From positions 63,550,001 to 63,614,000 of the forward strand of contig OZ260661.1 of assembly GCA_965285935.1 (NCBI GenBank): a stretch of DNA of 64,000 bases, given 5' to 3'. The number at the start of each line of letters is the position of its first letter. Positions within the stretch are counted from its first letter, which is position 1. The position numbers and the translations under genes are program-made. Positions 3,951-23,100 of the stretch are shown one piece after another. The stretch is from Ophelia neglecta (lineage: Eukaryota). Below the pieces are notes generated by a model that worked only from the letters and a program-made list of their open reading frames with translations, was not told the origin of the DNA and did no database searches.

Positions 3951-4410
3951 ATGGAAGAGAGAAAAGTGCGAAAATTGAGCAGGGATTGGCAGCATTTGGC
4001 ATACAACCCTAAACCACTGCAGAGACAGAGGGCCATGTCCCAAAATTCCATGCCTAGCCATGTTTCCCCTCCACAAAACCCAGCACTTAGCTCTTTTGAA
4101 AGTCAGCAAAGATTATCTTATGCTGGCACTGATGACATTGATAGAGCAAAAACTTTGCAGGCTCTCCAGAAACATTTCAAGATGATGCATGGGGCGAGTC
4201 TTGACAGTGCTGACCGTTCTGAATCTTCCCGCCCCTTCATGTATTCTAGAAGCAACAGTTCATTAGGCCTACAGGAGCAAGACTTGGAGCAAGAGGTGGT
4301 GACCAGTCACCAGGCTCAGCCCTCTCAACACATTGTTGAGTGGTACCAAAGCTTAAAAAAAGAAGTTGGAATAACGATACCCAAAGAAATTGAAACTATT
4401 ATTATTAGGA
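3951..4410 (+). CDS. SYNE1: Putative (alternative) first coding exon of nesprin, 153 aa
   Basis: aaacATGg start with upstream in-frame TGA at 3906. Donor A|GTGAGT at 4411 is phase 1, matching the acceptor at 6085. Confidence 0.7.
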
Positions 4411-5101
4411 GTGAGTATCAGGATTTTAAAGGTTGCTTGATTATTATCTTTAACAAAAGCTCTTTGATGTTAATGTTCATATACTGAAGATGATAGGGAT
4501 AATCCAAGAAAGATTTCATCTGGTCTGTTAGCTTATCTTATTACAAGTTAGTCACAAGCAAAATATGCAAAACTGCCTGTTGTTATCAGAGATTACCACA
4601 GATGATACTAACAGCTAATGCCCTTTATCTGAGACAGTTTAAACCAGGATCCGTAGCTGGGATTACATGAAAAACCCAGTACCTGTGCTTACATACAGTA
4701 CAAGGAACTCCCTGTCCTTCTCTGATGTCTGTCCATTAGACTATCTATCCAATCAAGGTCTTTAGTATTGATATAGAAAGGCCACCTCAAGTGTGTATTC
4801 ATGCTGTTTCAGTGTTTGGGAGAGTCACATGTACATGTTAATACATGTTAGAGAAGAGTGGGTTTACTATTGTGATGTTGTGATATTGAATGACTGACAT
4901 GAACATGAAAGAAACCCCCATTATGTTTTTTTTGATGGTTGCATTGTACTGAGCCAATCTCTTGATCCAGTGCTGAGGTTCTTATACTTGAAACCTTCAC
5001 ACAGTGTGTCTTAAACATCCCATGTGTGTACATATACATGTAAAGTATAAGTTAAGAATGCTATTTGAGATGAATACAAGGAGAATGTAATTAGCTATAT
5101 A

Positions 5102-5135
<34 letters not shown>

Positions 5136-8100
5136 CTACCTTTGAACTCTTCTGCTCAAATATACATGTATATGGACAATAAGTAATTTAGCAAACAATT
5201 GGATATCTTGAAGGGGGGTGAGGGGGGAGGGGCTGATGTATATTTTTGAAGAAGAAAATGCTTAGCTTGGCTTGTTCTTGATTTTCCCAATTGTGTCCAT
5301 CTGTGGTTTAGTTCACTCAAATGTACAATAAAGAGGGCAATGATTGAGGTTTATTTCATGAATTTGAAAAATATTCAAACTAGTCATATCATCATGTGCC
5401 TAAATGACCAGGCAGCAAAATTTATTTGTAGTTTTTCAGAGAGTTGAGGTTTTTCTATTTTAAAATGCTAAAAGTCTGAAGGTTAAGGCTTATCACATAT
5501 GTTATGGGCAATCTAAAATAATTCAGTATGATCATGCGTATCACATGGTGCCTTCGACATTGGTAGTAAGTTTAGTAAACTCATGATGCACATACTGTAT
5601 TTTCTCCTAACAAGATTCATCCATTCATCTGATGGTGATAGGCGGTATGAAGACATTTCTTAAATGCCATCAATCACATTAAGGATGAAATTGTAGTTGT
5701 CATTTAATCGTTATAAATAAACTAAAATGAACTACCAATATCATACACAGCATTGGATGAGTAATTATGGAGTAGAAATACTATAACTTCTCACTATCAT
5801 AATTATGCCATAATATTTTTTTTAGATGACTACATATTCTTAGTCACATTTGGAGATTTCAGGTTGAATTCCTAATGTACATGATCAATTTTCACTACTC
5901 AATATTTATTAAAAAACAATCGTAATAAAAATTTAGATTTTTTAGGTATGCACCCTAAAAAGGCTGTTTTATTAATGGAAGAGGTTAAATATTGTATTTT
6001 TATATTGTATGTTGTTTTTAATGATGATTAAACCATTAAATTAAAAACTCAATCAACTCAAAATTCATTGTTCGACTTTTTCAGATGAACAAGAAAGGGT
6101 GCAGAAGAAGACATTTACAAATTGGATCAATTCCTACCTCACAAGGGTAAATATTAACAGATTTATTTATTAAAATGTGCATTTAACCTTTATTTTGAAA
6201 TCATATACTAGCAGAATTTTTTTTCTTAAAGCATTTGTATGATTTGATATCGACTCCTGTTCATTTTGCCTGATAAGAAGGTGCAAAATAAATAAGACAT
6301 ATGAGTTGTAATGTGTAGTTGTACAAGTAACCTAGCAATAATTTATTTTCAGCATGACCCACCATTACGATGTGGGGACCTTTTTGAGGACATCAAAGAT
6401 GGTGCCAAACTCCTTGCCCTTCTTGAAGTATTGTCGGGAGAGTCACTGGTATGCATAAAATGAAGTGTTTTATTAACATTGAATTGTTTGCCCTTGTTCA
6501 CATTCGTATGGTGAAATATAGTACAAGTAGGTTCTGAACGTATAGTGGTATGTACTAGTAATATATTTTAAAAATATTAAGCCAGTAAATGGTCCTTCAA
6601 CTATACTGTGATGTTTTCTGTAAACAAGTTGGTTCTTTCCTATTTTGACAGCCAAAAGAAAAAGGTCCCCGGTTAAAGAGGCTTCACTTCATCAGTAACG
6701 TTACCACCGCTTTAAAATTTCTAGAAAACAGAAAAGTAAGTGAAATTTATCTGTTTTATTAAGTGGCTTGTCTTTCAGCACTAAACCCCTCAACTGAGAG
6801 ACAAGCAGTGTTGAGAAAGCACTGCTGACTCAACTATAGTCATTTTATAAGTTTTTGTAAATCTAAGTTGCCCCCTTCTACAGGTGAGAGGTGGGTGGCA
6901 GAGCTTTAAATCTTATAATTTGACAGGTAAATGCTATTATTTATAACCCAATTATCTCTCTCTGTATAACTCTATGGCCAAATGTAAAATCATCAGATGA
7001 TCACACTCACAAAAACAGCTTTTTCCTTTGAAATTACCTTCTTTTTAGCAGTTTTATGATTGATAACTCTGATTCCTTTGGAGAGAAAGGCAACATATTT
7101 ATTTCATTAGTTCCCAAATGGCAACAATCATTAGAATTCCTCTAAATGCCAATTCTCTTAATGAAAAACACAAATTCCAATCTGTTTTCTGGGTTTGATG
7201 TTCAGGCCAAAAGCAATGTTGTTCTGGGTAAGGATATCCCCATTCCTAACAGACAACAGGTTAAGATGGCCAAAAAATGAATACTTGACATACACACCAC
7301 ATTGTTTGAAGTAACATTTAAACCCAAGGAAGCTGGCCTAAAATGTACAAACTGTAATAATATGCATACTGCTGAACTAATACAGCATAGCTGGAATGAA
7401 TCATAATTTACTGCCACTTTATGATCAAATGGACTACGCATGAATTTGCTGTTTGCTAACATACAAAAGCTACAAAGCAACATAGCAAAAGCTACATAGC
7501 AATTCAAATAGCATTTTGAAATCCTATTAACTTTCTGAATGTACAATGTATTTACAAGTTTAAAAAGTAATAACTTACAAAGCTCACAAACACACCCTTG
7601 TTATGTGTTATTTGAAATAAGATACTAAAGAAAGTGCATATTCATTACAGTTTATCGGTAGCATTAATGAATGGAACTATGAACATTTTCACATTTGAGC
7701 CCCCCCCCCCCCCCCCCCCAGCTAAAGAAAAGTCAGCTTCAGTTAAATCTTAAATGGTCATTATTTGTGCACAGTTTAACAAAAAATGTAAAAAGTGTGC
7801 ATAAAATAACCCTGCTCTCTATGTAGGTAGTATGACATTAAACATCATAATACTACTAGGTACTCCAAGCATAAACTACTTGCCTGTGGCCCTGGTATTA
7901 AATCAGAACAGCATATTTGACCATTCAAGAAGCCAGTGTTCATTAGCAGTCTCAGTGGAAACATCTCAGGGAAACTCATTTTTTGATTTTTACAAATACC
8001 ACAGGAAATATTCAGCTACAATCTTTAGCTTGAATTTGTAAAGAAAGTCCACTTTTAAGTGATTGGTTTTGAATGACTCTTGGCCGAGGAACATGCCATT

Positions 8101-11100
8101 TTGAACCAGTGAGGCATGAAAATGAATATACTGTACCTGGTTGTTACCGATACTATGAGAATGCTGACAACTGAATATTGTCAATTTGGTGTTATTTTTT
8201 ATGAAAGGTACCACTTTCTATCACCCTATCAATGCTGACATTTGCCTGGGCAAACCCCATTTTACTTTGCTGTAATAATTCTCAGGGGAGAGTTCAATTA
8301 TTAATAGCAAAATGGGCGCACCTTGACCATAAAAACATAGGCATATGGGTCCTTTTGAGTGCTTGGTCACAAAATGGTTTAAATGATGGTTTAAAAATAA
8401 AGGTATTTTTTCATGCTGGCGATGAGTTCATTGCCTTTGGCTCAAAACTTGCTACTTTCCCCTTGCAAGTTCAAAGTTAATATTTTGTATGTTCCAATGC
8501 AGATATTATGATAGAGACAACAATTATCTGCAAAAGAAAATGTATATGAATATTACCATACAAGGATCACAGAAAGTTATATTGAAAACAATGCAGGTCA
8601 CTGAAGAAATTCTCTGTATAATACAATCAGCCTCCCACCCCACCCCCACCCCCATCCCCAGGATAATTCAGTTTCATCATATGTTGTTTAAATAGTGTTA
8701 CTCTTTAACACAGATATATATTTTGTTTGCAATTAAGGAATTGGTGTTACCATAGTTACTATTCCCCAATATATGTCATTTGGAAACAAATGAATTGTAT
8801 TTCCAAAGGCATGTCCTAATATTAGTTAAAGGGAAAAAAACTACTGGTAAATTTTCCTTGTATGTGTATGTGGCCATGCATCTATGTCCCCTTTAAGGAT
8901 ACAAATCGTGTACATATATCACTGTTAATTAAAAGTAAAAATTAACTTAGATATCAAATAGGAAATTTATATCTGGGGCAATTTATAATAGCATTTTGAT
9001 GTTTTTTCTGTTCTTTTTTCAGATAAAATTAGTCAACATCAATCCATCAGATGTAGTAGATGGAAAACCCTCCATAGTGCTGGGTCTAGTATGGACTATC
9101 ATTTTATATTTCCAAGTAAGTTTAAGCCAAATTAAAGCTTAATGTGTTGATATTTTGTAATATGAGTACTGGTGATACTTCAGTAACATTATATATGCTT
9201 AATTTCATTCATCGATTAAATAAGGCTACAGATATAAAGTAAAAATTTAGCTGTACCCATAAATCTTTCTGTTTTCTTAACATTTTGAAGGAAAAAACTG
9301 CTTTAAAAAGAAATGGCTTGCATGAAACTGTGATTAAAAATTGTGTATCAACTATGTTGTTTATTCTGACATAATGTGTACATATTCTCCACTATAGCAC
9401 AATTAACCATGATACTGACAGTATATAAATTTTCTTTGATTTAATTTAAGATTGAGGAATTTACCAAAACCCTGGCCCAGCAGGCTGCCTCCACACCATC
9501 CAGTAGTAACAGTAGTCTTGCCAGCGATGGTGCTTCAAGCGCCAAGCGGCCCCGACCTGGCCTGGAGAGATTCAAGAAAGCCGGCGCCAAGCAGGCCATG
9601 CTGCTGTGGGCCCAAAAAGCTGTCACCAAGTAAGTCAAACTCGAGTCTGTAATCATTCCTTATCTCATTATGGTGTTGGTCTGTGGTAGAAATCTGATAA
9701 TGTACTGTATGTGAAGGTAAAAGAATGTACTTAACCTGGTGTTGTAGTTAATTTTAAAATTGCAATATCTTCAAAATGCATGTCTAATACTGTAGGCACT
9801 TGTGTGATTCCTGTTAGTTAATGTATGGAGTTTCATTGGGGTCTTTTGTCATTATTGGAACATGTCAAAATTCTGCTGTAAAGGTGATCTTGTCAACTGA
9901 CCTTTAACCCTGTGGGATCACCAGATTATAGATCTCCAAGCAACATGCTCATAACTATGTGCTTCAGATAATAAAAACATGTGATATCATGTGAAAACGG
10001 TGGTTAGTTTGACCCATGCTGGCTTGTTGGCCATAATTGGACATATCGCTCCTATGTATTATCTCAGTTGCACACAGTGCACAGACTTACATCACCAGGA
10101 AGTGTCACCATGTTATCCCTACAGAGGAAAAGGTCTGACTAAATATTCATGTACGTCTACATCATTGATGATTGGTGGTTTAAAATAAATCTTTTTTATC
10201 CATAATCTAAGACCAGTTTTATCAAATGTTAGGCAAATGCCATGCAATTATCTAGTACAGTCTTGTCATGTACATGGATGTTTACATGGCAGCTCAATGG
10301 ATTATCATTTATTAAAGTTGTGTAATAAAAATTGAGTTACAGTCACTTGCATGCATAGTCACTAACCAGACATTTAATTTTACAGGTTTAAGGATGAGTA
10401 AGTTGGGTCACAATGTGTGGATGCTTCAATATATGCTCACTCACTCACTAACACTCTCAAACTAATTTCAATTGTTAGAAATAGATTACCGTAGGTTAGT
10501 TATAAAATGTAGGTCCCTGGCACAACATAGTTAAATGGTAATATGGCCATGTTTTATCAACCAAGCTTGGTGTAAGCATTTAAATAGATTCAGAAATACA
10601 TGTCACATAACTTTTCCATTTATCCCATAGCCTTTAAATGATTCATCCCTTTGCCAAGTCCCGTAGATAAAAGGTCCAAGATAGTATTAAGATCAACTCC
10701 TATCCAGGTGTACTGTAGGACAAATGATGTCCCAACGCTACCTGTAAATACACAGAACTCTGTGCCTTGCAGCAATTCCAATATTCTTGATGAATTGTAT
10801 GATACTTGGAACATACATGTAAGTGTATACATGGAAAATTTTTTGATGTTCATTGCAAAACAAATTCAAAGTTGCTGTGCCAAGAGGTTATAATAAAGCA
10901 AGTCTTTTGCAAGTGTGAAAGAGTATTAAGCTTGCTTGTAGAGTTTTTCTCTTGATGCGGGGCTTTCCTCAAATACATGTACATGTAAACAATTATTTTC
11001 CATGTAATGAGCTTGATGTTCCTGTCCTGGTGTGCGGTGTAAAATTTATATATACTATTGATATCAAATTGATGTTTCAGTGCGACGGATGAAAGCAATT

Positions 11101-14100
11101 TTTTTGGTCCAATGTGTCGTTCCCCTAGCCTAGTTTCACATTCCTCAGCCAGTATTTATATGCTGCTGCATTTTCTATTTCCTGCTATATTACATTAGTA
11201 TAAATCATATAGACTGCATCATTGTCATTTAGGCAGGTGGAGTACAGCCAGTTCTCCCCAAATAAGAATATTAAATGATGTCATGCTTTTATTTAGTTTC
11301 CTGTGCCATTAAGCATAGTACACAAATGTATGTATTCTGGGGTACATGCATATACACACAGGGAACCAATATTTTATTAAAGATGGAATTATTAAACAGG
11401 CACTGAGCAGTTTTATTTTTCTAAATTACTTAATGTTGTTTGCTCCTATACATTATGCTACCAGCCTTAGCCAGCAAGTGGTGCCCTCTACTGTACATAC
11501 CATGTACTTGTATTGTTCACTAACTTGACCATGATGGCTATTAAAACCATTCATGTTCAAACAGCTCTAATTTCAGCCAACTGTTCTAGGTAGTTCTTAG
11601 CAATTGTAGATAAACAAACCATATACATATATACATAATATTGACAAATGTACGTGTGTTTCCTGGATAGCCATGTACAGAGTTTAAGAGATTTCGTGGA
11701 GCAACTACTAAAAAAGATGACAAATGCACATGTGTATATGAAAATCTGAACCTGATATGTACACAACATTTAATAGGTCTAAAATCAATCCCCAATAGAA
11801 TCTTATTGATAGTCTTAAGGAAAAGTATTGGGCCATATTAAATCCTTGTTCTTGTTGAATGGAATAATATTTGCCCTGAATTTTAGGTGGAGCTACAATG
11901 AAATTACTGTAGGTTTCCAAACAGGTCTCTTATTTTGAGTTTAAAGATTAAATTCTGTATTCATCTTTTTATTGGAAAGACTGTAAAGCCAATTTAAATG
12001 GTATATTTTGTACTGGTTAAAATGCTTTTTCTAGCCTTATTAATGGAGAAAGTTGGTTATTATTGTAGGTATAGTCACCTGGAACAACATTTTACAAAGT
12101 AGGCCTACTTTGGTATGTGAAGGGCATGTAGAAGTTGGTATGGATACAAAATGAAATGTTTGGGCTGGAACTGTTTTTAATAAATGCCGATATTGCATTG
12201 ATTGGTCTCACAATTTCATCTTGTTCTTGCTAACCTTTTACAAGGTCATTGCCACCAAATTGAAAGTCATTCTCAGATATTTTTATATGCAAATTGATGA
12301 CATTGTTGGTGATTGCAGCACACTATTGTCACCTCTCAGGTTTCTTTGCTAAACTATGTTTAAATCCCTCACAACAGCCCACAATCCTCCTGGCTTAAAC
12401 AATAGCAGCTTTGTTGGTCTCTTTAACGCAATCAAAATCTTTCAAGTCCTTAGGTTTCCATTGTTCTGACTGTAACATGTTAAAGGATTTAAGGTTTTAA
12501 TGGTAAAAACCATCTCAAGTTTGAAATCACAAAAAGCAGGTCTTATTTGTTTTATGTAGTATTTTCTCATCTAAACAACATGTAAACAATATCATCAAAA
12601 TAAATGACAACCTATAAATGACAACCGCTTGATTTATTTTATATGAAAAAAATGTCCATTAAATACTATGATAACCTTTTTGCTGTCAGTTGTTGCTAGT
12701 TTATACCTAGCTGTGCCTTGGCATGTATCAGATTAAGTATTCACTGGTGTCATCATACATCATATTGTTTAATACTGAAATTGAGAAAACACCACACACA
12801 AATTTGTGCAATGAAAATTTATATCAATGTACGAATTTTTCCTAGTCACTTTTTCTGCTACTGGCAACATGAATCAAATTAATTGTTCAGAATGTTTGAT
12901 CAAGATATTTCAATTAGGTAATTGTTTGTTATATGCTATTAAGGTAAAGACCTAGTACAGCAAACAAACAAAACTGTCTTGCCTGGGCCCCCAACTATTG
13001 ATATTTGCTAGGAAAACTTTTGCGCCAATAGTTCATGTACATGTTGGAGGCAAGATAGGTTGTGCATGTGTATATGTATTGAGTCCTGATCATTTTGGAG
13101 GCTAGAGGGTGGCAAGTCTGAACATGTACCTGGCCCCACTGATTTCATATGAACATGAAAGAAGCCAATTCATAGGTACAGGGACCATCATAACTTGGCC
13201 AATTTTCAGCTGTTGTTATATTTTCATCTTCATTCAGCTGATAAACATGTGGTATATGACGTATTAATCCAGATTTTAATCTGTTTAAGTACTCTCTTTT
13301 TATACTATTGATTAAATTATATTGACTTTGAATTAAGTGCAGTCATAAGCCATTTTGTACTGCATAAATACATGTGTAATCAATTCTAGGCTCTGTTTGT
13401 GACTCCTGAGTTGAAGTTGGTGTTAAAGGTGAACAAAACGCACAAAACTTATGTAATTGAAGTACATGTTGCACAAGGGCTCACAGCAATGATTATATAA
13501 AAAAATGATAAGCGTGTTAAAGCTAACCAATTAGGTTTGTATAACAGAACGGCTTGGCCAGGAGAGCTTAGAGACATGGTTTGGGAGGGTCCTGGCAAGG
13601 AATAAATATAGATCCTGCGTAGGCATTGCTGGGGGATGCCCTTTCAGAAGTACAGTGGGCGATAAAACAAAACTGAAGACTTAGGCTGAGGTCAGGGAGA
13701 AGTTTATCCAGCTGGTAGATACTCACTGACAGATACTGGGAGGACCTGTGTGTTTTGAATAGATCAAGTCTGGATACTTGCTAACTGTCAGGAATGCCTG
13801 TGTTGGCACTATTGGATTAATTTATTACATCATGTTGATACCTTGATAATCCCAGTAAAGTTTATGATGCGTAACTGGTGATAAAGGGGGCAAATAAGAT
13901 AAAAGGCACTCCGACACCCGGGACAAGGCTCTTCTATGTTCATATTGACTCTACAATTGGCTGTAGTATCGAGTGGTAGTATAAAATTATTGTATATCTG
14001 AAGATATGTGAAGAGCTTTTTACGCCATGGAAAAAGCGGCCCATGCTATTTGGTATTATTATCATTCCCAGCCTAGATTATTAATAGTGCAAGTTTTACT

Positions 14101-17100
14101 GGGCTCGATTGAGACCTTGTTTTAGGATTTTGATCGGCACCATGTCATTGATAAAACTTGTTTGTTTGAGACCGTGAAAAGATAAGTTATTGTGATCTGC
14201 TTAGGCAGTTCCGGTATGGAGATTTGGTTATTTACTTGATTCATAGGTGAACCATTGAAATAAATAAAATGGCTTACATGGACTTACTCATAAGTTTGGA
14301 CAACTGAATGCTATTGATATTAGCTTTACCTGGATTTGGATCAAAGTCTTCGGTAGACTGGTTGGCTGAGCCTAGTGCAGGGGTGTTTGCGTGTGTGTAC
14401 ATGGCTGAATGTTGAATAGAGGTGCCGCCAATCAGCGCCAATCAGCTTCAGATCCCACCACCTTGTGCTCTGGCTCTGTCAGGGCATATACCACCGATCT
14501 GCATGATTGACCAATACATAATCAGATCTCCACAGTTTGGTTCACTTGGTGCTAAGCTGATATCTGAGCTAGCAGGGAGCCCAGTACTGGAACTGGCAGT
14601 CATTGTAATCTGGCGGTTTAATTCTGAACTTCATACGCATTCTTTCCCCAACGAATTTTCATGCTAACATCTGGATATGTTATGGTTACTGACACCCTTA
14701 TGAATATGACGCGGAAGAAGACGCCTAGACAATGATTTTTATGTCACAAGAATTATTGCCAATTTTCGATATGGATGAAGCAAACCGTGCTGTGTTGTGT
14801 TTTAGTCCTTCAGTTGACAACAGAATGGATATAGCTAGTTTACCAACTAAAGGAATTACTAATCATTGGACCATGAACAAGTTTCAGACAGAAATCATGG
14901 GCTAAGAGACACTGAACCAGCTTCACCGGCAGAATCTAGTGGCATAATTTGTGTTGGGCATTGATTCATAGTTTCTCTGACTGATTCTCCACTTGTGGCA
15001 TTGTGGAGAATCCAAATAAATTTTGACCTGGCTTGGTTTGGTGTGTCTTTAAACAGGAAAAAGTATTTTCTACCAATTCTTATTACCCCTATTACTGTCA
15101 TTACAATGAAACAAACATTTGTTACACTTATAAAGGATGCTGTTTAATTAATATAAATCACATATTTAACAGAATACTAGTATAATTATCAAGTGCAAGT
15201 CTATCCAATGTTAGAATGAAACATTATTGAGAGTCAATTTATAACATCAAGTCAATGTGGCATATGTCAAGAAATTGACCTCTTAATCTAATTAAAATGG
15301 CATCCAAAGAACCTAGGCCCAAGAGCCGCAGTGGCAAGAAAAAGTCTCCGTCCCCGGATTACGCTGCCATGTCTGAAACCTCAGGGTCATCAAGGTATTC
15401 AGAAAGCCCCAAAGTGAAAAAGAAAAAAGTGCGAAGCCCTGCTCTAGATGTGACGCCCAGCTCCGACTCGGTCTCCCCATTGTCCAGCCCCAAAGTGAAA
15501 AGAAAAAGCAAAAGCAAGGACAGGAGTGCAACTGCTTCCCCATCCATTAAGTCAGATCGCGAGGGAAGCCCAAGTAGGGGGAGGGCAGAGTCAGTGGCTA
15601 CAACTCGAGTGTCAAGTGCCAGCAAGTCTAATCCCAATAAGAAAACCATGCTCAAATACATGATACACGAAGTCCGGGAGCTGAAAAAACAACTAGATCC
15701 AAATGCTCCTGACATTCACGTAAGACGTCGTAAAGGGGGTACTCACTCGCCCTCCAGAGAATCCCAAGCAGCAGGCTCAGTGCTTGTCCTCACTGAGTCT
15801 GATATTGAAGAGCAAGAACACAAACATGAAAAAGTGCATGAAAAAACTAGGGAAGTGATAAAAACTGAAGATGGTGAGAGAATAATTGAGAAAACCTACT
15901 CCAAGAGGGCTGAGAGCCATATATTGCGGAGATCCCCAGGTCCTCAAGAGGGAAGCCATAGTCCATTGTCTAGACGAAGAATGTTTCCTGCTGCTTCAAT
16001 GGAGGAGACTGGGGATACGGGGACGTCCCCTGTTGAAGTGCAGCTTCTTAATCAAACGTTTCCTCCCACTCGGCTGGATCACAGAGGCAAGACCCCTCCT
16101 GGAAGAGAAAGGCTTAACAGAACTACAGCAGGCATATTAAGAACTCCTTTGCCGATTGTGCAAATCTCCCATGAAGGCTCAGACTACTCACCACAGTATC
16201 TAATTGATGCTCTGAAAAAGTATGTGTTTCTTCATACATTAGTTTCAGTTTCAATTTTTAGCATGATGGGTACTAATCGTAATCAGATTCGATAGAACTT
16301 GAAAGCTATAAATGACATATTTGATTAAGCCAAAATGAATGGTAATTTTCCACTCGGTTCTTTTTTCCCTGACTCCACAGTAGGGAAGGGCCATTCTTCA
16401 GTTATGTATTGATGTAAATGACCCCATGGGGGTGTCTTTTACAACCATACAAAGGTACTAAATTTAAATATACAACAATTGATCAGGTCATCTGACTTTA
16501 CTTTTTTAGCTCCAATTTCAGCACATGTTTGATAGTAAGCTGGTAGCAGGCATTCGACTGTTCAATTCAACCCACCCTTGCACTGTATCATGTTTACATC
16601 TAAATCCTTAAACATTGGTACAGTTCTTCTTGACTAGGGGTGAAATATATTGATTATATATTATATTTCAAAGTCAAATAGGTTGATCTCTTAGCCAACA
16701 TTTTCCTTTCTACTGGCATTTGGCTTGTTAAAGCTGCTGCAAAATGAGTTTATGGAGGATTTATTTTTTTGGCTTGTCAGTAAGCTTTTTATGGTATTAA
16801 AGTTGAAACACATTCTTTACAATAAATGATTAAACACATTCAAGAAAATGATGGACTACAAGGTTTTGAGAGTTGTTGTTGCAAGTTATGAGTTATTTAT
16901 GCTGAATTTAGAATTGTATATGTTCATGCTAAAACTTGCAAGTCAATATTTTTAATGAATATGGTGATTTTGTTTTTAAACAGAGAGGGAAGCAGGGGAT
17001 TGTGTGTGATAATATATTGTACAATATTAAATAAGCTTCAAAGCTTTTAGAGAAGTCCCCTTGCTGACAGTCATACAGGAATGTATCAGAGAATACCTTG

Positions 17101-20100
17101 ATCAGCATGTCTTGCTAAATCAACATCAACCAATGGTAGCTGTGTGACATAGTCACCCTGGATCTACACGATGTGAACAGATCTTTATACCTAAGTTTTC
17201 ATATCTTAGTGTTGTTTGTACATTTAGAAAAGTTTCCTTTTTTGATACTGATCGATAATAGACTTCTCATCATACATGTGCTACCATGTCAAAATGCTAA
17301 TGGATCTGCAATCGAACATAATTTTGTGAATTGTTCGTTTTGATATAATGCACCTGTTACCTTTTTATCCAGGATATTTACTTATTGTTTGTCTAAAGGG
17401 ATCAAAGAATTGAACATACAAGGTTGGCTGTATAATATATATGTTCATGTACAGTCTCAATGGCCCACTCCAAAAGATGATTGCCTATAATGAAGCAGTT
17501 AAAAAGAAATAAATCCCTTTTGTTTAGTGAATTCGATGGCTTGATAACAGTAAATGCACTTTGATTTATTCTTTGCAATAAAACAAACAATATTTTTATA
17601 GGCTACTTTTGGTCTCTACCTTCATATTATTTTTACATACGCAAATCCAATTGAATGGTTACAAAAGTTCTAGATACAAGTTCAAACATGAGAATCTCTT
17701 ATCATAGAATAGTTTTATTCATTCAAGACCATGAACTGCATTATAAATACCATGGATCCATTTCAGTTAGATTCAGTTTTATTCATATTTTGTATACATG
17801 TATCTATCTAAGCCTAAGAAACTAAACTCCTAGTAAAACCTTAAGTTTACCAAAAGATAATTAACAAAGGTTTATTATGTATATTCATCTATGATATTTT
17901 TCTGGTGTTATGTTTTATTAGATCTGCCACTTTCAAGGAGTCACTTTTAAGAAACAATGTCCACAAACAAAAATGAGAATCCGCTGTTTTTGCTTACAGA
18001 CGCTTTGGCATAGAAGTAAAAGATTTTGGGAGCAGTTGGCGAGATGGCTACGCCTTCAATGCAATGATCCATAACATTCGTCCAGACCTCATAGACATGG
18101 CTGCTCTACCACAAAACCCAAACAGAACCAATTTGGAGAATGCCTTTTCCACTGCTGAGGATCACCTCGGCATTCCAAGACTGCTTGATCCAGAAGGTGG
18201 GACAGATGAATCCTTAATCCAACTTGATTTGAATTTCAATATTTAATCAAGCTTAATTCAGGCTAAATTCATTTAATTCAGATAAAGTTTATTATACAAG
18301 ATTTGCTCTTCCCTATAAATGCTTGGTGCTTGCTTTCAGATTTGGATGTAGCCAAGCCAGATGAAAAGTCCGTTATGACTTATGTGGCCCAGTTCCTAGA
18401 AAAGTTTCCCGACCCTGATGCTGATTTTCCAGATACCAAAGGTGGCTCCAAGGTAGAGTGTGATATTACCATTGATTGTATTTACCAAATCATTTTATTA
18501 TGGTTTTAGTAGATGAGATTGACTTAAAATTTATCTTTTCAAATTGATTTTGAAGAATTAAATGCTAAATCAGACATTTTGTTTTTATTTGAAAAGTTTT
18601 AGGATATTCATAGTTCCAATATACTATGTTTGCTTTGCCTTTCCCTTGAAAATGTTAAATTTTATGGTTTGTCTGTTTGGTAGCTGTCCATTTTTATCTA
18701 TTTTCCCCACAACTCTTAAATATCATTTGTCTGTACAGCCTGCTATACTTGTAAGCAGTAAATGGGATGATGAACTACAGATTGGAGGGGGGAACAATTT
18801 AAGTGTTGGACAACCTTCTTCATTTTTACAAGCACCAGATGCTAAATTTACACAAGTTGGGAAAAAGAATCCCAAGCTGCAGCGCAACCTGTTAGAGGGT
18901 GGTCATGAGCTGATAGCCTTTCACAGTCCAACCCTGGAGCGTAGACAGTTTAGAACAGATCTAAGGGCAGCACTGAGTGCCGGAGCCTCCCCACTAGGCT
19001 CTCCACAAGGCACACCCCCAGTACAGAGGAGAATGTTACCTTCTTCAGACGAGTTCAGGTCCAGTATGGACAGCCTGAGCTCAGCTCCAGATGAATTATT
19101 GAGCTCACTCGACCCTGTTGAAGCCGCCAGACTTCGAAGGATGGAAAGAAGGCGCCATGAAAGGTTTCATCTGACTCCCTCAACAGAAGACATTCACCTG
19201 CAAAAAGCAGCATCAAAAAGCCATGAGTCACAACACATTGAAGGACATAGGCACAGGAGACAAAGGACCAGACAGCTTCTGGTTCCTGGAGAGGAGGAAC
19301 AAAGAAAGTTAAGTTTACCCCCAGAACTTGATACTGTCTCTCGTGGATCTGAATCTCAAAAGCCAGAAAGGCCATTGTCTCCTGAGGAACCAACAGAAGT
19401 GGGGGGAGCCAGACCCAAATCAAAGAGACACAGGAGGGTAAGAAGGCGATCTGACCAACACAAGGGAGAACCAGAAATGGACTGTTCCACACCTGATAGA
19501 TATACAGTTCATAAGAACATTGGCCAATTGATTCCTGGATCTATTGAACATTCAGAGCCTAAACTAACTGAATCCTCTCAATTAAAAGATACTATAATAA
19601 CTTCAGAACAATCAGTTTGGGTAGAACATTCCGAATGGCAGTTGACAAAGTCAACACCACAGAAGATAACTGTAAGTGCACTACAAAGTATGAAACTGAG
19701 AAAATATCCATCACTGGAAGATTTTCAGTCTTTGAAGGAGAAAGCAGAGTTGGCACCCAAAGGTAGCCTTCAGGCCTTGTCTCTTGCGATATTTGAATTA
19801 AACAACCTGAAACCAGATAGGACCAAAGCACCTGAGCAGCCAAAAGAACCTAGTTGTCAATTAAGGCCCTCAAACTATGACTCTTCTAATAAAGTAACTA
19901 CACAATTATATGTTGGACCTTTAGACGCATCAAGCTGGAGATTGTATCCTACCATGGCAGATATTCAGTCTTTGAAAGAAAAAGCTCAAATTGCCCCTGC
20001 TGACAGTCTCCAGTCATTGGCCCTGACTGTTGTAGAACTGCCATCAGAGGGTTATTTGAAAAGTAAGTCAAGTGAAGAACTGTTTCTAGAGCAGCCAGGT

Positions 20101-23100
20101 CAAAAAAGACCAACAGAGACTGTAGTAGTTAAAGGAACAACACTGCAAAAGGAGGAATCTACATGTACTGGTAAAATGGATGCTGAAGCAACACAAGCTG
20201 AAAACTTAACAGTAGATGTTCTTCTAGAACCTGCTTCAAGTCTAAAGAAAGATATTGATATGACAGCTAAAGTAGATTGTGATATAAAATCTGGAAAGCT
20301 AACTCAAGAAGCCCCTGATGACAGGTTCCAGTCAGTTCCTGGACTGGATCTGCCAGCAGATGGTAATCTTGATGAGAGTTATAAAACTGAGTCTCTGATC
20401 TTAGAGCAGCTGGCTCAAAATAGACCATCAAGTCCATCTGAGAATATAATTCCAAAAGCACACATGACAGAGGATACCAGCAACAATGGTGATTCTGTAC
20501 ACCAGGCAGAGGATGTGGTAGAGGGTGAGAATAAATTAATCTCTCTGAATACAGAAAAGGATGATGATGTGACCTTGAAAGATGTGGATGATGCAGAATC
20601 TCTGCAGAATGCTCAAGATGCTCCTGGTGAAGAACTCCAGTCTTTTGACCTTGTTGTAGGAGAACTGCCAGGTGAGGTTGATCTCAACAGAAGTGATATT
20701 ACTGAGGAACAGCTGGAGGAAAATAAAATGCCCGAGTATTCAGACATTAATGGTAAAAAGTCACTGTTGGAAAGGGATACATGCAAAACTGATATTTCTG
20801 GAAATCAGGGGGAACAGACAAAGATGGATGTTGATACAGGGAGTTTTGTTACTTTGGAGAAGGATGCTGACTTAGCATCTAGACATGTGGATCAAAGTAA
20901 CCAGGCCATGAAAGAGAGTACCCAACCCGAGCCTGAGCAGACACAGGGCATTAAGGAGGAACTCCCTACCGAGGCAGTTTTAACCAAGGGCAAAACTGAG
21001 GAAAATCTCTCAATCGAAGGGGGTTTAACCAAGAGCAGTGGTATTGAAGAATTCCTTCAACAGGAAACGCTTCCAAATCTGCCAACAAAACCATCTGAAG
21101 TTAGGAGAGCAGAAGTTCACAATGTGGAGGGTACAGACAAAGCTGACAAATCAGGATATGAGGCTGATACAGTTGCTGAAAGAAAGGGAGAAGCTCAAAC
21201 TATTGAGAGAGGTAAGGAACCAGATATTTTAAGCATCCAAGACAGAGAAACTTTGGACAGTTCTGTATTGATAAAAGTGCCATCACTGGATTCTGGCGTG
21301 GAAACAGAACAAGACCAAGGCCATGTTTGTGTAGAGAAGCCTGAGGTCAGTCAGCCTGAGGACCATGTATCCAGTGAGTTTGAGTTTCTGCGGATTGCTG
21401 ATGATGATGAGGTGGCTGTAGACTCTGGTAGTGAGGAGAGGAGAGCAAACCTGGGTTACCAAGTAATCCAGACGCCAGAGAGACACAAGGTTCTTCCACT
21501 TCTCTTATTGAGCTTGTTGCATCCAGTTAGTGGAATGCCCCTCTCCCATTGGACTAACATCCAGCCTAGCTATATTAAGGCAACCAGCATTATAGCTGTA
21601 CTACATTAGAATGTCTTGAAATGTACTGCAAGATATAACCATCTTTCTGTGATCTTGTACTGTTACATTAGTACCATACATGTCCACCCTATCATCCTTG
21701 GTTTAATATGTGTTCTTCTTCCATTTTTGAGTGAGTTTTCTGAATTTCCCTGTAATTATTACTCAAAGGAACTGATCTTTATTGAGTAATATAACATTTT
21801 ATTGCAGGTCCCCTGAGTGTTTCTTATTTTATTATGTTGTTAATTAATTCTTTTGATTCTTTGCATTGGAATTTCTCCTGACCATTGCATGATATTTGAC
21901 AACATCATTAATGGTGAGACTTCCTTTTGAGATTGTGTGTGCAGTGTATTATTGTTTCCTATTTAAGACTCATTCTCGTCTGTCCTGTCTGATTTAGTCT
22001 CATCTGTCCTGTCTGATTTAATCGTGCTTCTCAATTTCAAAAAAGTTGGATAAAAGCCCTTTTTAGAATAAAGGTCACCTATTAGGTACCTATTTGCAGC
22101 CATGATTAATGATTGTTGTAGATGTACATGTACTGTATATTAAGCTTATAACGATTGGCTAAGTGATTACTTTTAAAAGAAATGTTTTCTGCCATCCAAA
22201 CTTTGCACTTGCTCTGTTGTAAAAGGACTAAATTATGTAAACATGTTCCTTTCTTCCACACAGTGTATATATTGGTTTTCCCAGGGAGCTCCTTGTACAG
22301 TGACACATTATGTTAGGTCCCTGTTGTCTTCATGTTTGCTGAATCAATATCAAACCCGCAACCGTCAGCTTCCCTAGCAAGCTCCATTTCTCTGATCTGA
22401 TTATTAACACTCAGACATTAGACCTCTGCATCAATATTTTATATTAGTGATTTATTGTTCACAAATATAATATTTGACATTGCCAGAATATTTGTAAATA
22501 GCAGATTACCACTGAAGTGTTGTTTGTTACTAATATTTAAGGAATGCCATCTTTAATAGATAGATAACAAAAGTTGGTTAAAGCATGAATGAAATAACTT
22601 TACTGTTATAGAAGTTAATTGAAAACAAAAAAAATTGTCAGAATTAGTCAATAAACATTTAGTACTTATTTTACATTTTCAAAACCATTTAATTAAAGTA
22701 TACTGGTGATACTAAATTATGCATATTTCAGTTGATCACATTGACTTAGTTAATTGGTAAATTGTCAGCTTTACAAACCTAGTTTGTTTGTTTACAGCTT
22801 GTTGTGCAGGTGGATGCAGCACGTCGGGAAGCTCTGAAGGAACAAAAGGAGTATGATGAACTTATTATGTGGCTAGACCAAGCAGACAACTTACTGAAGA
22901 TAGTAGACAGCCCTGTCCATGACAGGCAAGAAGAGTATAAGGTTAGCTGACCACTTGAATTATTATTTGTTTGTTGTGCATATGTACATGAATTCTTCAT
23001 TTTGCTACAATGGCCATATAAATGTTTTTTTTTATAGAACAACTAATGGCTGTATATAAGGTCAAGCATGGGGTGGAGGGCTATAGAGATTCTAGAAAAT

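What the first reader, a model, noticed from the sequence alone, without database searches (positions are those of the whole stretch)
15297..16219. Hidden internal first exon predicting a CH1-less nesprin with a basic, NLS-like head
Seen: a 307-codon exon inside the intron that splits CH2, with its own ATG and a phase-2 GTATGT donor that joins exon 18000 (...[19 protein letters not shown]...). It has basic clusters ([26 protein letters not shown]; the last two look like an internal duplication), many SP/TP sites and one helix ([18 protein letters not shown]). The isoform would lack CH1 and also the first helix of CH2, which [11 protein letters not shown] might replace. Known: CH1-lacking isoforms from alternative promoters exist in spectraplakins (Shot, MACF1, dystonin) and bind actin poorly. 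I know of no equivalent basic head in nesprins. Inference: a promoter switch turns an actin-linked nesprin into an actin-uncoupled form that may be nuclear, microtubule-binding or membrane-binding.
Basis: partly seen in the sequence, partly recalled or inferred. Interest (0 to 1): 0.75.

Follow-up and report, generated by a model that had tools for sequence, protein, structure and literature searches.

The report
Conserved alternative head exon of nesprin
An unannotated, evolutionarily conserved coding exon sits inside the actin-binding-domain region of a giant nesprin gene and most likely gives a version of the protein that lacks its main actin-binding half and carries a different, basic head instead.

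Summary
A 307-codon exon (15297-16219) with its own ATG ends at a phase-2 GT donor. Its phase matches the CH2 exon at 18000 and equals that of the normal upstream exon (ends 9629).

- Gene: a nesprin, with CH-CH, spectrin/SYNE1 repeats, and a KASH exon 48.6 kb past the window.
- Not chance: 338 open codons against at most 255 in 2000 simulations.
- Conserved: 35 database relatives share an almost invariant [22 protein letters not shown] helix and an amphipathic tail fixed to the exon end.
- Same position elsewhere: in 4 of 6 contigs from other organisms the head lies upstream of the orthologous CH2 exon on the same strand. One contig also shows the CH1 and linker exons upstream.
- Splice signal: a phase-2 NN|GTA donor in 6 of 6 loci.
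- Selection: dN/dS 0.10-0.15 among three relatives.

No RNA run was available, so the splice and the promoter remain inferred. The basic, Ser/Pro-rich character is conserved, but NLS-like K/R runs are not (10 of 32).

Best reading: an alternative first coding exon giving a CH1-less nesprin, analogous to spectraplakin CH2-only isoforms. I found nothing in print. I class it as a new variant of a known kind, of moderate interest.

The parts
15297..16219 (+). Alternative first coding exon (the 'head'): 307 codons plus 2 bases, phase-2 end
   Evidence: coding score +0.22 bits/codon in frame, negative in the other five frames. Relatives; synteny.
15297..15638 (+). Basic, Ser/Thr/Pro-rich low-complexity N-part (residues 1-114), with K runs and an in-frame 22-nt direct repeat (15405-15426 / 15486-15507)
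   Evidence: net positive in 31 of 32 relatives; K/R run of 4 or more in 10 of 32.
15639..15704 (+). Core motif [22 protein letters not shown] (residues 115-136), the near-invariant element of the family
   Evidence: Invariant in alignment A1. M122, H124, E125, V126, R127, D134 and P135 are at least 90% conserved in A2. Listing.
16188..16219 (+). Amphipathic tail [10 protein letters not shown](K), fixed to the exon end
   Evidence: hydrophobic at -6 (34 of 37), -5 (27 of 37) and -2 (35 of 37; Leu in 32), counted from the split junction codon.
16220..16225 (+). Splice donor GTATGT
   Evidence: NN|GTA in 6 of 6 loci whose exon end is present.
16220..16295 (+). Read-through tail up to the stop; not coding
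   Evidence: Coding score -0.49. An 11-nt insertion polymorphism lies behind 16283. There is no counterpart in relatives, whose frames stop at the TAA of GTAA.
18000..18196 (+). CH2 exon that the head is inferred to join (RFGIEVKDF...LLDPE)
   Evidence: Pfam CH, 51.8 bits. Orthologous exon downstream of the head in L012-L015 at 76-85% identity.
18340..18455 (+). Last CH2 exon
   Evidence: L013 counterpart.
9451..9629 (+). Normal exon bypassed by the head: CH1-CH2 linker plus start of CH2 (…[14 protein letters not shown]), phase-2 donor
   Evidence: L013 counterpart at 4250-4423 has the same phase.
6085..9115 (+). CH1 exons bypassed by the head (6085-6146, 6353-6449, 6652-6735, 9023-9115)
14428..14445 (+). 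Two tandem CCAATCAG boxes in a single-copy GC-richer patch, 860 nt upstream of the ATG; candidate promoter element, unproven
   Evidence: Not conserved in L013 or L017.
15129..15157 (+). Two TATAAA hexamers at -168 and -145 from the ATG; candidate core promoter, unproven

Best explanation
Positions 15297-16219 are an alternative first coding exon of a nesprin-1/2-type gene. The proposed mechanism is as follows.

- Transcripts that start shortly upstream of 15297 splice from 16219 to the CH2 exon at 18000. They skip the lead exon, all of CH1, the linker and the start of CH2.
- The product is a giant nesprin whose N-terminus is a roughly 300-residue, mostly disordered head. It is basic and Ser/Pro-rich, and it carries one near-invariant amphipathic helix ([22 protein letters not shown]).
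- A short amphipathic tail follows, abutting the remaining CH2.
- Without CH1 the protein should bind F-actin weakly. The invariant helix would then recruit some other conserved partner.

Shown here: the exon is real, it is under purifying selection, its position and splice phase are conserved, and it lies in a CH-CH/spectrin/KASH gene.

Inferred: the splice itself, a promoter of its own, loss of actin binding, partner binding by the helix, and packing of the tail against CH2.
For: 1. Size and coding signal. There are 338 open codons; none of 2000 simulations reached that. The in-frame coding score is +0.22 bits per codon. It is negative in the five other frames, in three intron ORFs and in the read-through tail.

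2. Relatives. The word search found 4 proteins. The exhaustive profile search found 35 at E<=1e-3, of which 19 were at <=1e-10. All share the core helix and the tail.

3. Synteny. The metagenome scan returned 6 loci. In L012, L013, L014 and L015 the head is followed on the same strand by the orthologous CH2 exon, 76-85% identical, after 450-1090 nt. The window's own closest paralogue of that exon is only 48% identical. L013 also has a CH1 exon and the linker/CH2-start exon upstream, so the head sits in the same intron. The other two loci end too early to tell.

4. Splice signals. A phase-2 NN|GTA donor is present in 6 of 6 loci with the exon end. A Y-tract cag| acceptor is present at the CH2 exon in 5 of 5. 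The normal donor in L013 is also phase 2.

5. Selection. dN/dS is 0.095-0.151 at dS 0.21-0.72 among L014, L015 and L016. All internal indels are multiples of 3. In the window species 4 of the 6 listed SNPs in the exon are synonymous, against 23% expected (one-sided p=0.03).

6. First-exon features. The ATG is the first in the frame and has a Kozak-like context in the window, L013, L014 and L015. No pyrimidine-tract acceptor lies within 300 nt upstream in 5 of 5 loci.

7. Gene identity. Pfam gives CH, Spectrin, Spectrin_SYNE1 and KASH (94.7 bits) on one strand. Spectrin-like ORFs lie in the sampled stretches between the window and the KASH exon.

8. Precedent. Passages of bioRxiv 10.1101/122010 say that CH2 alone binds actin little or not at all. 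They also say that all spectraplakins have CH2-only isoforms started from alternative promoters.
Against: - No RNA evidence. The look-up of sequencing runs listed no RNA holder. The three runs laid were genomic contigs with no joints.
- None of the stored relatives carries a CH domain after the head: 0 of 37 by motif and 0 of 32 by Pfam. This is probably because they are unspliced ORF calls that stop at the TAA of the GTAA donor. It still means no spliced product was seen anywhere.
- No conserved non-coding element or shared promoter motif was found upstream.
- The CCAAT boxes are 860 nt from the ATG, and the motif count in the window is not above chance (5 found, 3.1 expected).
- The start of CH2 is lost, so the remaining CH2 may not fold unless the tail substitutes for it.
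- The listed SNP density in the exon (6 per 923 nt) is only mildly below that of the flanks (33 per 3577 nt). The list is also incomplete: 31 more differences were not shown.
Confidence: 0.75

Rival explanations
1. A separate, unspliced gene nested in the nesprin intron. It would encode a disordered protein of about 300 residues that ends at or just after the conserved tail.
For: In 5 of 5 other loci the frame stops directly after the junction codon, at the TAA of GTAA. All 35 database relatives are stand-alone ORF products of 95-586 aa. No spliced form was seen.
Against: The 'stop' is always the donor GTAA. Where the donor is GTAT (this window) the frame runs on for 25 unconserved codons with a negative coding score and an 11-nt indel polymorphism. 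Other relatives read on for 1-7 unrelated residues. The third base before the T is G in 6 of 6 loci. The phase equals that of the normal donor in both loci where that can be checked. The strongest tail conservation sits at fixed distance from the junction. The head always lies just upstream of the same CH2 exon on the same strand.
Confidence: 0.12
2. An internal cassette or 'poison' exon. It would be included in transcripts from the upstream promoter and would truncate the CH1-bearing protein.
For: It lies within the main transcription unit. The in-frame stop six codons before the ATG would end the upstream frame.
Against: No pyrimidine-tract acceptor lies within 300 nt upstream in 5 of 5 loci. 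A poison exon would not need 300 codons kept under dN/dS of about 0.1, nor a conserved ATG context.
Confidence: 0.04
3. The exon is used as proposed, but the isoform's main role is nuclear: the basic clusters act as an NLS.
For: KKKK (residues 41-44) and RRRK (143-146) resemble monopartite NLS cores. Several relatives have K/R runs of 6-7.
Against: Runs of 4 or more occur in only 10 of 32 relatives. A giant spectrin-repeat protein with a C-terminal KASH membrane anchor is not an obvious import cargo (established knowledge of KASH proteins).
Confidence: 0.1

Closest known systems
CH2-only N-terminal isoforms of spectraplakins (Shot C-type; MACF1 and dystonin type 3)
   Same: An alternative start site gives a unique lead sequence joined to CH2 without CH1 in a giant CH-CH/spectrin-repeat linker. 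CH2 alone binds actin little or not at all (passages of bioRxiv 10.1101/122010).
   Different: It is a different gene family: KASH-bearing, with no GAS2 domain at this locus (the GAS2 hits lie on other contigs). The head profile finds one place only in this genome and none at the spectraplakin-like locus on C5. Here the start of CH2 is also dropped and a conserved tail takes its place.
Alternative-promoter isoforms of vertebrate nesprin-1/2 (Rajgor et al. 2012, PMC3388047)
   Same: Nesprin genes use many internal 5' ends to make N-terminally different proteins.
   Different: In Table 1 of that paper (section 5 read) the most upstream alternative 5' ends are in intron 14-15 (nesprin-1) and exon 49 (nesprin-2). 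That is beyond the CH domains (recalled: the CH domains lie in the first ten or so exons). The passages seen speak only of variants that have or lack the CH domains; none has CH2 alone. Its supplementary maps could not be opened.
Drosophila Msp300 isoforms (PMC11230431)
   Same: A nesprin locus with at least 11 isoforms made from alternative promoters, splice sites and terminators. Some of them have non-canonical heads or tails (passages).
   Different: The passages state that isoforms E, F, G and M lack the CH domains altogether. 'CH1' and 'CH2' occur 0 times in the text, so no CH2-only form is described there.

Membership tests
Nesprin-1/2-type KASH protein (the host gene) | Paired N-terminal calponin-homology domains | tested here: met
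   CH exons are mapped. Pfam CH scores 51.8 bits on exon 18001-18195, with weaker CH hits on 6353-6448 and 9023-9115.
Nesprin-1/2-type KASH protein (the host gene) | Long rod of spectrin repeats | tested here: met
   Pfam Spectrin (49.5-85.6 bits) and Spectrin_SYNE1 (39.8-57.7 bits) are over their cut-offs on 3 of 3 large rod ORFs tested.
Nesprin-1/2-type KASH protein (the host gene) | C-terminal KASH domain in the same gene | tested here: met
   A KASH exon lies at G000:C1:63662575-63662748, + strand, 48.6 kb past the window end: 93.2 bits and 94.7 bits. Spectrin-like + strand ORFs occur in the three 10-kb samples between. Continuity as one transcript is not shown.
CH2-only N-terminal isoform, spectraplakin type 3 / C-type manner | Unique lead exon downstream of the CH1 exons, with splice phase fitting a CH2 exon | tested here: met
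   The same arrangement is seen in L012-L015.
CH2-only N-terminal isoform, spectraplakin type 3 / C-type manner | The spliced mRNA exists | not testable with these tools
   No RNA run was listed.
CH2-only N-terminal isoform, spectraplakin type 3 / C-type manner | Own transcription start or promoter | tested here: inconclusive
   There is no acceptor-like site within 300 nt upstream in 5 of 5 loci, TATAAA at -168 and -145, and CCAAT boxes at -860. No conserved upstream element was found, and no CAGE or RNA data were available.
CH2-only N-terminal isoform, spectraplakin type 3 / C-type manner | Weak or absent F-actin binding | not testable with these tools
   This needs co-sedimentation. It is inferred only from what says of CH2 alone.
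Homology of the head to any described family | Significant match to Pfam, the PDB or another place in the same genome | tested here: not met
   Pfam: nothing over cut-off for the head, and 0 of 32 members with a shared family. PDB: 0 hits at E<=1 and 0 at E<=10 with the profile. Own genome: one place only. The motif string was found in 0 papers.
Classical nuclear localisation signal | Basic K/R cluster, conserved among relatives | tested here: inconclusive
   The window has KKKK and RRRK. K/R runs of 4 or more occur in 10 of 32 relatives and runs of 3 or more in 19 of 32. No functional test was possible.

The most novel reading that the evidence does not exclude
The head is a previously unrecognised class of nesprin N-terminus, conserved across a broad animal group. 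In this reading its invariant [22 protein letters not shown] helix, together with the re-capped CH2, forms a docking module. That module would switch the outer end of the LINC complex from F-actin to another conserved partner, such as microtubules, a motor adaptor or a membrane. Promoter choice would then decide which cytoskeletal system pulls on the nucleus.
Probability: 0.25. Interest if true: 0.7.

Novelty: new variant of a known kind. Interest (0 to 1): 0.5.

Why it matters
Nesprins couple the nucleus to the cytoskeleton, and the N-terminal CH-CH pair defines the 'giant' actin-linked forms. A conserved, selected exon that swaps CH1 for a different head would mean that giant nesprins exist in at least two N-terminal flavours, as spectraplakins do. 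The second flavour would have a very strongly conserved short helix whose partner is unknown.

This gives a concrete peptide for pull-downs and a defined isoform for knock-out. It also shows that genome annotations based on unspliced ORF calls file this exon as orphan 'hypothetical proteins'.

Tried and rejected
RNA evidence. The look-up of sequencing runs (kind rna) listed three runs of one sample, none on record as RNA. Laid on 13500-19400, they were contiguous genomic contigs with no joints. They were useful only for polymorphism.

Context came instead from the single metagenome scan.

No fold of the head or of the hybrid CH2 was obtained.

Second word search. The search with the 32-row alignment returned 8 proteins among 8000 scored candidates, none with a Pfam domain. 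It added two close relatives (P0036, P0037) and nothing else.

Paralogue test. The head profile finds one place in the genome (3 of 3 candidates scored). There is therefore no second copy to compare.

Promoter.
- No Rfam family lies in the intron.
- The GC-richer patch with the CCAAT boxes is single-copy.
- The motif count in the window is not above chance.
- No upstream block is shared with L013, L014, L015 or L017.
- A CAAGTC hexamer upstream of the ATG in 4 of 5 loci is too weak to build on.

Origin of the related contigs. A paper search for their accession prefixes gave 0 papers. The organisms remain unnamed, and the window's own organism was not identified.

Rejected readings. Chance ORF or pseudogene was rejected. 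Homology of the head to spectraplakin leads was rejected.

A resemblance of MIHEV to the 'Spindly motif' of dynein adaptors is recalled from memory only. It was not tested and is not used.

Literature. Four nesprin/Msp300 term searches, one more and the motif search found no CH1-less nesprin. For PMC3388047 I read passages and section 5. For PMC11230431 and 10.1101/122010 I read passages. All other papers were seen as listings only.
Full report
THE OBSERVATION

An ATG at 15297 opens a frame that runs to a stop at 16293-16295, giving 332 aa. The stop-free stretch is 338 codons, 15279-16292. The frame crosses ...CTGAAAAA|GTATGT, so an exon ending at 16219 has 307 codons plus two bases.

The acceptor ttgcttacag|A at 18000 opens the exon [16 protein letters not shown]...LLDPE. 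Pfam places this exon at positions 22-86 of the 109-position CH profile, at 51.8 bits. The normal exon upstream (9451-9629...[14 protein letters not shown]) ends ...CACCAA|GTAAGT, also with two bases of a codon. Both donors therefore fit the same acceptor.

Of the next two exons only 18000 is open in the frame a phase-2 donor sets. It stays open for 82 codons, whereas exon 18340 hits a stop after 8.

CH1 is encoded by 6085-6146, 6353-6449, 6652-6735 and 9023-9115. The head thus lies in the 8370-nt intron that separates the start of CH2 from the rest of CH2. A transcript starting at the head would lack CH1, the linker and the first part of CH2.

The basic clusters, the 16 S/T-P sites and the +22 net charge are real. 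A 22-nt direct repeat 81 nt apart and in frame supports the suspected internal duplication.

IS IT MORE THAN CHANCE?

- The longest open frame in 1000 first-order Markov simulations of the intron was 204 codons. With the ORF's own composition it was 255. None of the 2000 simulations reached 338. The second longest real open frame in the intron is 84 codons.
- GC rises to 0.46-0.49 over the ORF, against 0.27-0.38 in most flanking bins.
- I scored codon usage with a model trained on six large rod exons against intron sequence. The head scores +0.22 bits per codon in frame. It scores -0.09 to -0.42 in the other five frames, -0.14 to -0.40 for three intron ORFs, and -0.49 for the read-through tail 16221-16292.

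WHICH GENE?

Pfam finds Spectrin and Spectrin_SYNE1 over their cut-offs on 3 of 3 large rod ORFs tested. A search of the window's own genome for KASH gives its best match (93.2 bits) on the same contig and strand, 48.6 kb beyond the window end. That exon scores 94.7 bits on its own. The three 10-kb samples fetched between the window and that exon hold further long + strand spectrin-like ORFs. GAS2 domains, which mark spectraplakins, are on other contigs.

The gene therefore meets the three defining features of a nesprin-1/2-type protein. That all parts belong to one transcript is not shown.

The CH2 exon has no close paralogue in this genome; the next best is 48% identical, 44 Mb away. The head profile matches one place only.

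RELATIVES OF THE HEAD

The head has no Pfam family over cut-off and no PDB relative. The word search found 4 proteins of 289-400 aa among 1846 candidates. They share an invariant [19 protein letters not shown] block.

An exhaustive HMMER search of 1.84 billion representatives with that alignment gave 35 proteins at E<=1e-3, of which 19 were at <=1e-10 and 5 at <=1e-30. All are 95-586 aa long. They are very diverse outside four or five short blocks.

What they share is the following:
- An N-part of variable length, often built from tandem repeats. It is net positive in 31 of 32 and 16-45% Ser/Thr/Pro.
- The core helix.
- Looser blocks resembling RRxLPxxP (17 of 38) and TYPP (18 of 38).
- A tail with hydrophobic residues at -6 (34 of 37), -5 (27 of 37) and -2 (35 of 37; Leu in 32), counted from the split junction codon. 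Three stored products without a tail were left out of that count.

None of the stored proteins continues into a CH domain: 0 of 37 by motif and 0 of 32 by Pfam.

GENOMIC CONTEXT IN OTHER ORGANISMS

It returned 6 loci. I then ran tblastn of the window's exon translations against them.

- In L012, L013, L014 and L015 the head is followed on the same strand by the orthologous CH2 exon, at 85, 83, 77 and 76% identity.
- The other two loci are too short downstream to tell. In L016 the head exon ends about 210 nt before the contig end. In L017 the contig ends inside the head.
- L013 is 14.3 kb long. It also carries a CH1 exon (756-851, 81% identical) and the linker/CH2-start exon (4250-4423) upstream of the head. 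The last CH2 exon (11058-11150) lies downstream. The head therefore occupies the same intron there.
- The L013 frame reads the same as stored protein P0003 (compared by eye).
- At the conserved end of the head all 6 loci that contain it have NN|GTA: the window has GTATGT and the five others GTAA.
- The CH2 exon has a pyrimidine-tract cag| acceptor in 5 of 5 loci, and the introns are 450-1780 nt.
- The normal donor in L013 is also phase 2.

The GTAA donors explain why the database proteins end just after the tail. Read through, NNG TAA gives one residue and then a stop. The stored proteins look like unspliced ORF calls, so their lack of a CH domain says little against splicing.

L014, L015, L016 and L017 are close relatives of one another. 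The independent lineages with context are therefore three (L012, L013, and L014/L015), plus the window.

SELECTION

Among L014, L015 and L016 the head has dN/dS of 0.151, 0.097 and 0.095, at dS of 0.21, 0.70 and 0.72. All internal indels are multiples of three. The intron between head and CH2 in L014 versus L015 differs at 23% of aligned sites, with 406 gap columns.

In the window species, 6 differences are listed inside the exon in the genomic contigs of one sample. Four are synonymous (I84, S234, G264, P286) and two are not (P54R, K265Q). At random 23% would be synonymous, giving a one-sided binomial p of 0.03. That table omits 31 further differences, so the count is partial. The listed density in the exon (6 per 923 nt) is only mildly below that in the flanks (33 per 3577 nt).

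An 11-nt insertion polymorphism lies behind 16283, inside the read-through tail. That fits a non-coding tail.

FIRST EXON OR INTERNAL EXON?

- The ATG is the first in the open frame, and an in-frame stop lies 6 codons upstream in both the window and L013.
- The context has A at -3 and G at +4 in the window, L013, L014 and L015.
- A simple search for a pyrimidine tract plus AG finds none within 300 nt upstream in 5 of 5 loci.
- Candidate promoter elements in the window are two TATAAA hexamers at -168 and -145. There are also two tandem CCAATCAG boxes at 14428-14445 in a single-copy GC-richer patch.
- The CCAATCAG count in the window is not above chance, with 5 found against 3.1 expected. Nothing upstream is conserved with the other loci.

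A start of transcription close to the exon is therefore likely but unproven.

WHAT COULD NOT BE TESTED

No RNA run was available. The three runs listed (one sample, one study) proved to be genomic contigs that cross the introns without joints.

The joined step (search or fold of head plus CH2) was left out.

HOW IT MOST LIKELY WORKS

An internal start gives a nesprin without CH1. Passages of the Short stop review (bioRxiv 10.1101/122010) state three things. [quoted passage not shown] CH1 binds actin, and does so better in tandem with CH2. All spectraplakins have CH2-only isoforms (Shot C-type, MACF1/dystonin type 3) with their own lead sequences from alternative start sites. By analogy this nesprin form should be poorly coupled to F-actin; that is inference.

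The tail's fixed register at the junction suggests it is translated together with the CH2 exon and packs on it, partly replacing the lost first helix. In the window the last residues, YLIDALK-, line up with WAQKAVT- of the normal exon: aromatic at -7, Ala at -3, and Leu or Val at -2. Across the family, however, the conserved hydrophobic positions are -6, -5 and -2, so the mimicry is partial. This too is inference.

The near-invariant helix, conserved where everything around it has diverged, is best explained as a docking site for a conserved partner. Its identity is unknown.

The basic Ser/Pro-rich part looks like a regulated, phosphorylatable disordered region. Nothing here favours nuclear import over microtubule or membrane binding.

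COMPARISON WITH WHAT IS KNOWN

It works like the spectraplakin CH2-only isoforms, but it is not homologous to them in the head. The head profile finds a single place in this genome and none at the spectraplakin-like locus on C5.

In Rajgor et al. 2012 (PMC3388047; passages and section 5 read) the alternative 5' ends of human nesprin-1 and -2 begin at intron 14-15 and exon 49. That is beyond the CH domains. The variants are described as having or lacking 'the CH domains'.

The Msp300 preprint (PMC11230431, passages) lists isoforms with or without CH domains and never mentions CH1 or CH2 separately.

Five term searches and a search for the motif string (0 papers) found no description of a CH1-less nesprin or of this head. 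'Not in print' therefore holds only for these searches.

VERDICT

- The exon is real, conserved in position and phase, and under purifying selection.
- The CH1-less isoform is the best explanation (about 0.75) but lacks transcript proof.
- The NLS or nuclear reading is weak.
- It is a new variant of a known kind: alternative-start isoforms of CH-CH linker proteins.
- Interest is moderate, and would be higher if the invariant helix proves to retarget LINC complexes.

Noticed in passing
window 18562-21609 (+): A 1015-codon open frame directly after the CH2 exons. It has no Pfam family and a positive coding score of +0.19, and it ends in a stop after a hydrophobic stretch. It could be a cassette or an alternative terminal exon, and it decides what either N-terminal form continues into. 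The scan already noted it as s1-741995.
   Followed up: partly
window 3951-4432 (+): An ATG-started open frame of about 155-160 codons upstream of CH1, with no Pfam hit and a coding score of +0.16. Phase-1 donors (A|GTGAGT near 4410, G|GTTGCT near 4432) would fit the first CH1 exon at 6085. It is probably the lead exon of the normal CH1-bearing isoform.
   Followed up: partly
window 14428-14445 (+): Two perfect CCAATCAG boxes 10 nt apart, with a third CCAAT at about 14512, in a single-copy patch of GC 0.50 about 860 nt upstream of the head's ATG. It may be a promoter. It is not conserved in L013 or L017.
   Followed up: partly
window 15196-15253; L013, L014, L017 upstream of the head ATG: A CAAGTC hexamer lies within about 100 nt upstream of the ATG in 4 of 5 loci: window -101 and -49, L013 -37, L014 -11, L017 -11. 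The window and L013 share the 10-mer CAAGTCAATG. Its meaning is unknown.
   Followed up: no
window 13500-19400: The three genomic runs of one sample differ from the window at roughly 1 site in 100 in introns. They also carry indels, including an 11-nt insertion behind 16283. The organism is highly polymorphic.
   Followed up: no
G000:C2:69968131-69968298 (-) and G000:C1:86202774-86202932 (-): Two further KASH exons score over the Pfam cut-off, at 84.5 and 47 bits. No nesprin-like CH2 exon was found on contig C2, so the second KASH gene may lack a CH pair.
   Followed up: no
P0022, P0004, P0007; L014 569-1755: The N-part of the head family expands by tandem repeats. Examples are about ten copies of a 16-residue Ser/Pro unit in P0022, four HKHRDSPDV-type units in P0004, and Gly-His-Arg-Ser-rich repeats in L014-L016.
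   Followed up: no
G000:C1:107553581-107553769 (-): A CH2-like exon 48% identical to the nesprin CH2 exon lies on the same chromosome, 44 Mb away. It belongs to another CH-domain gene that was not identified.
   Followed up: no
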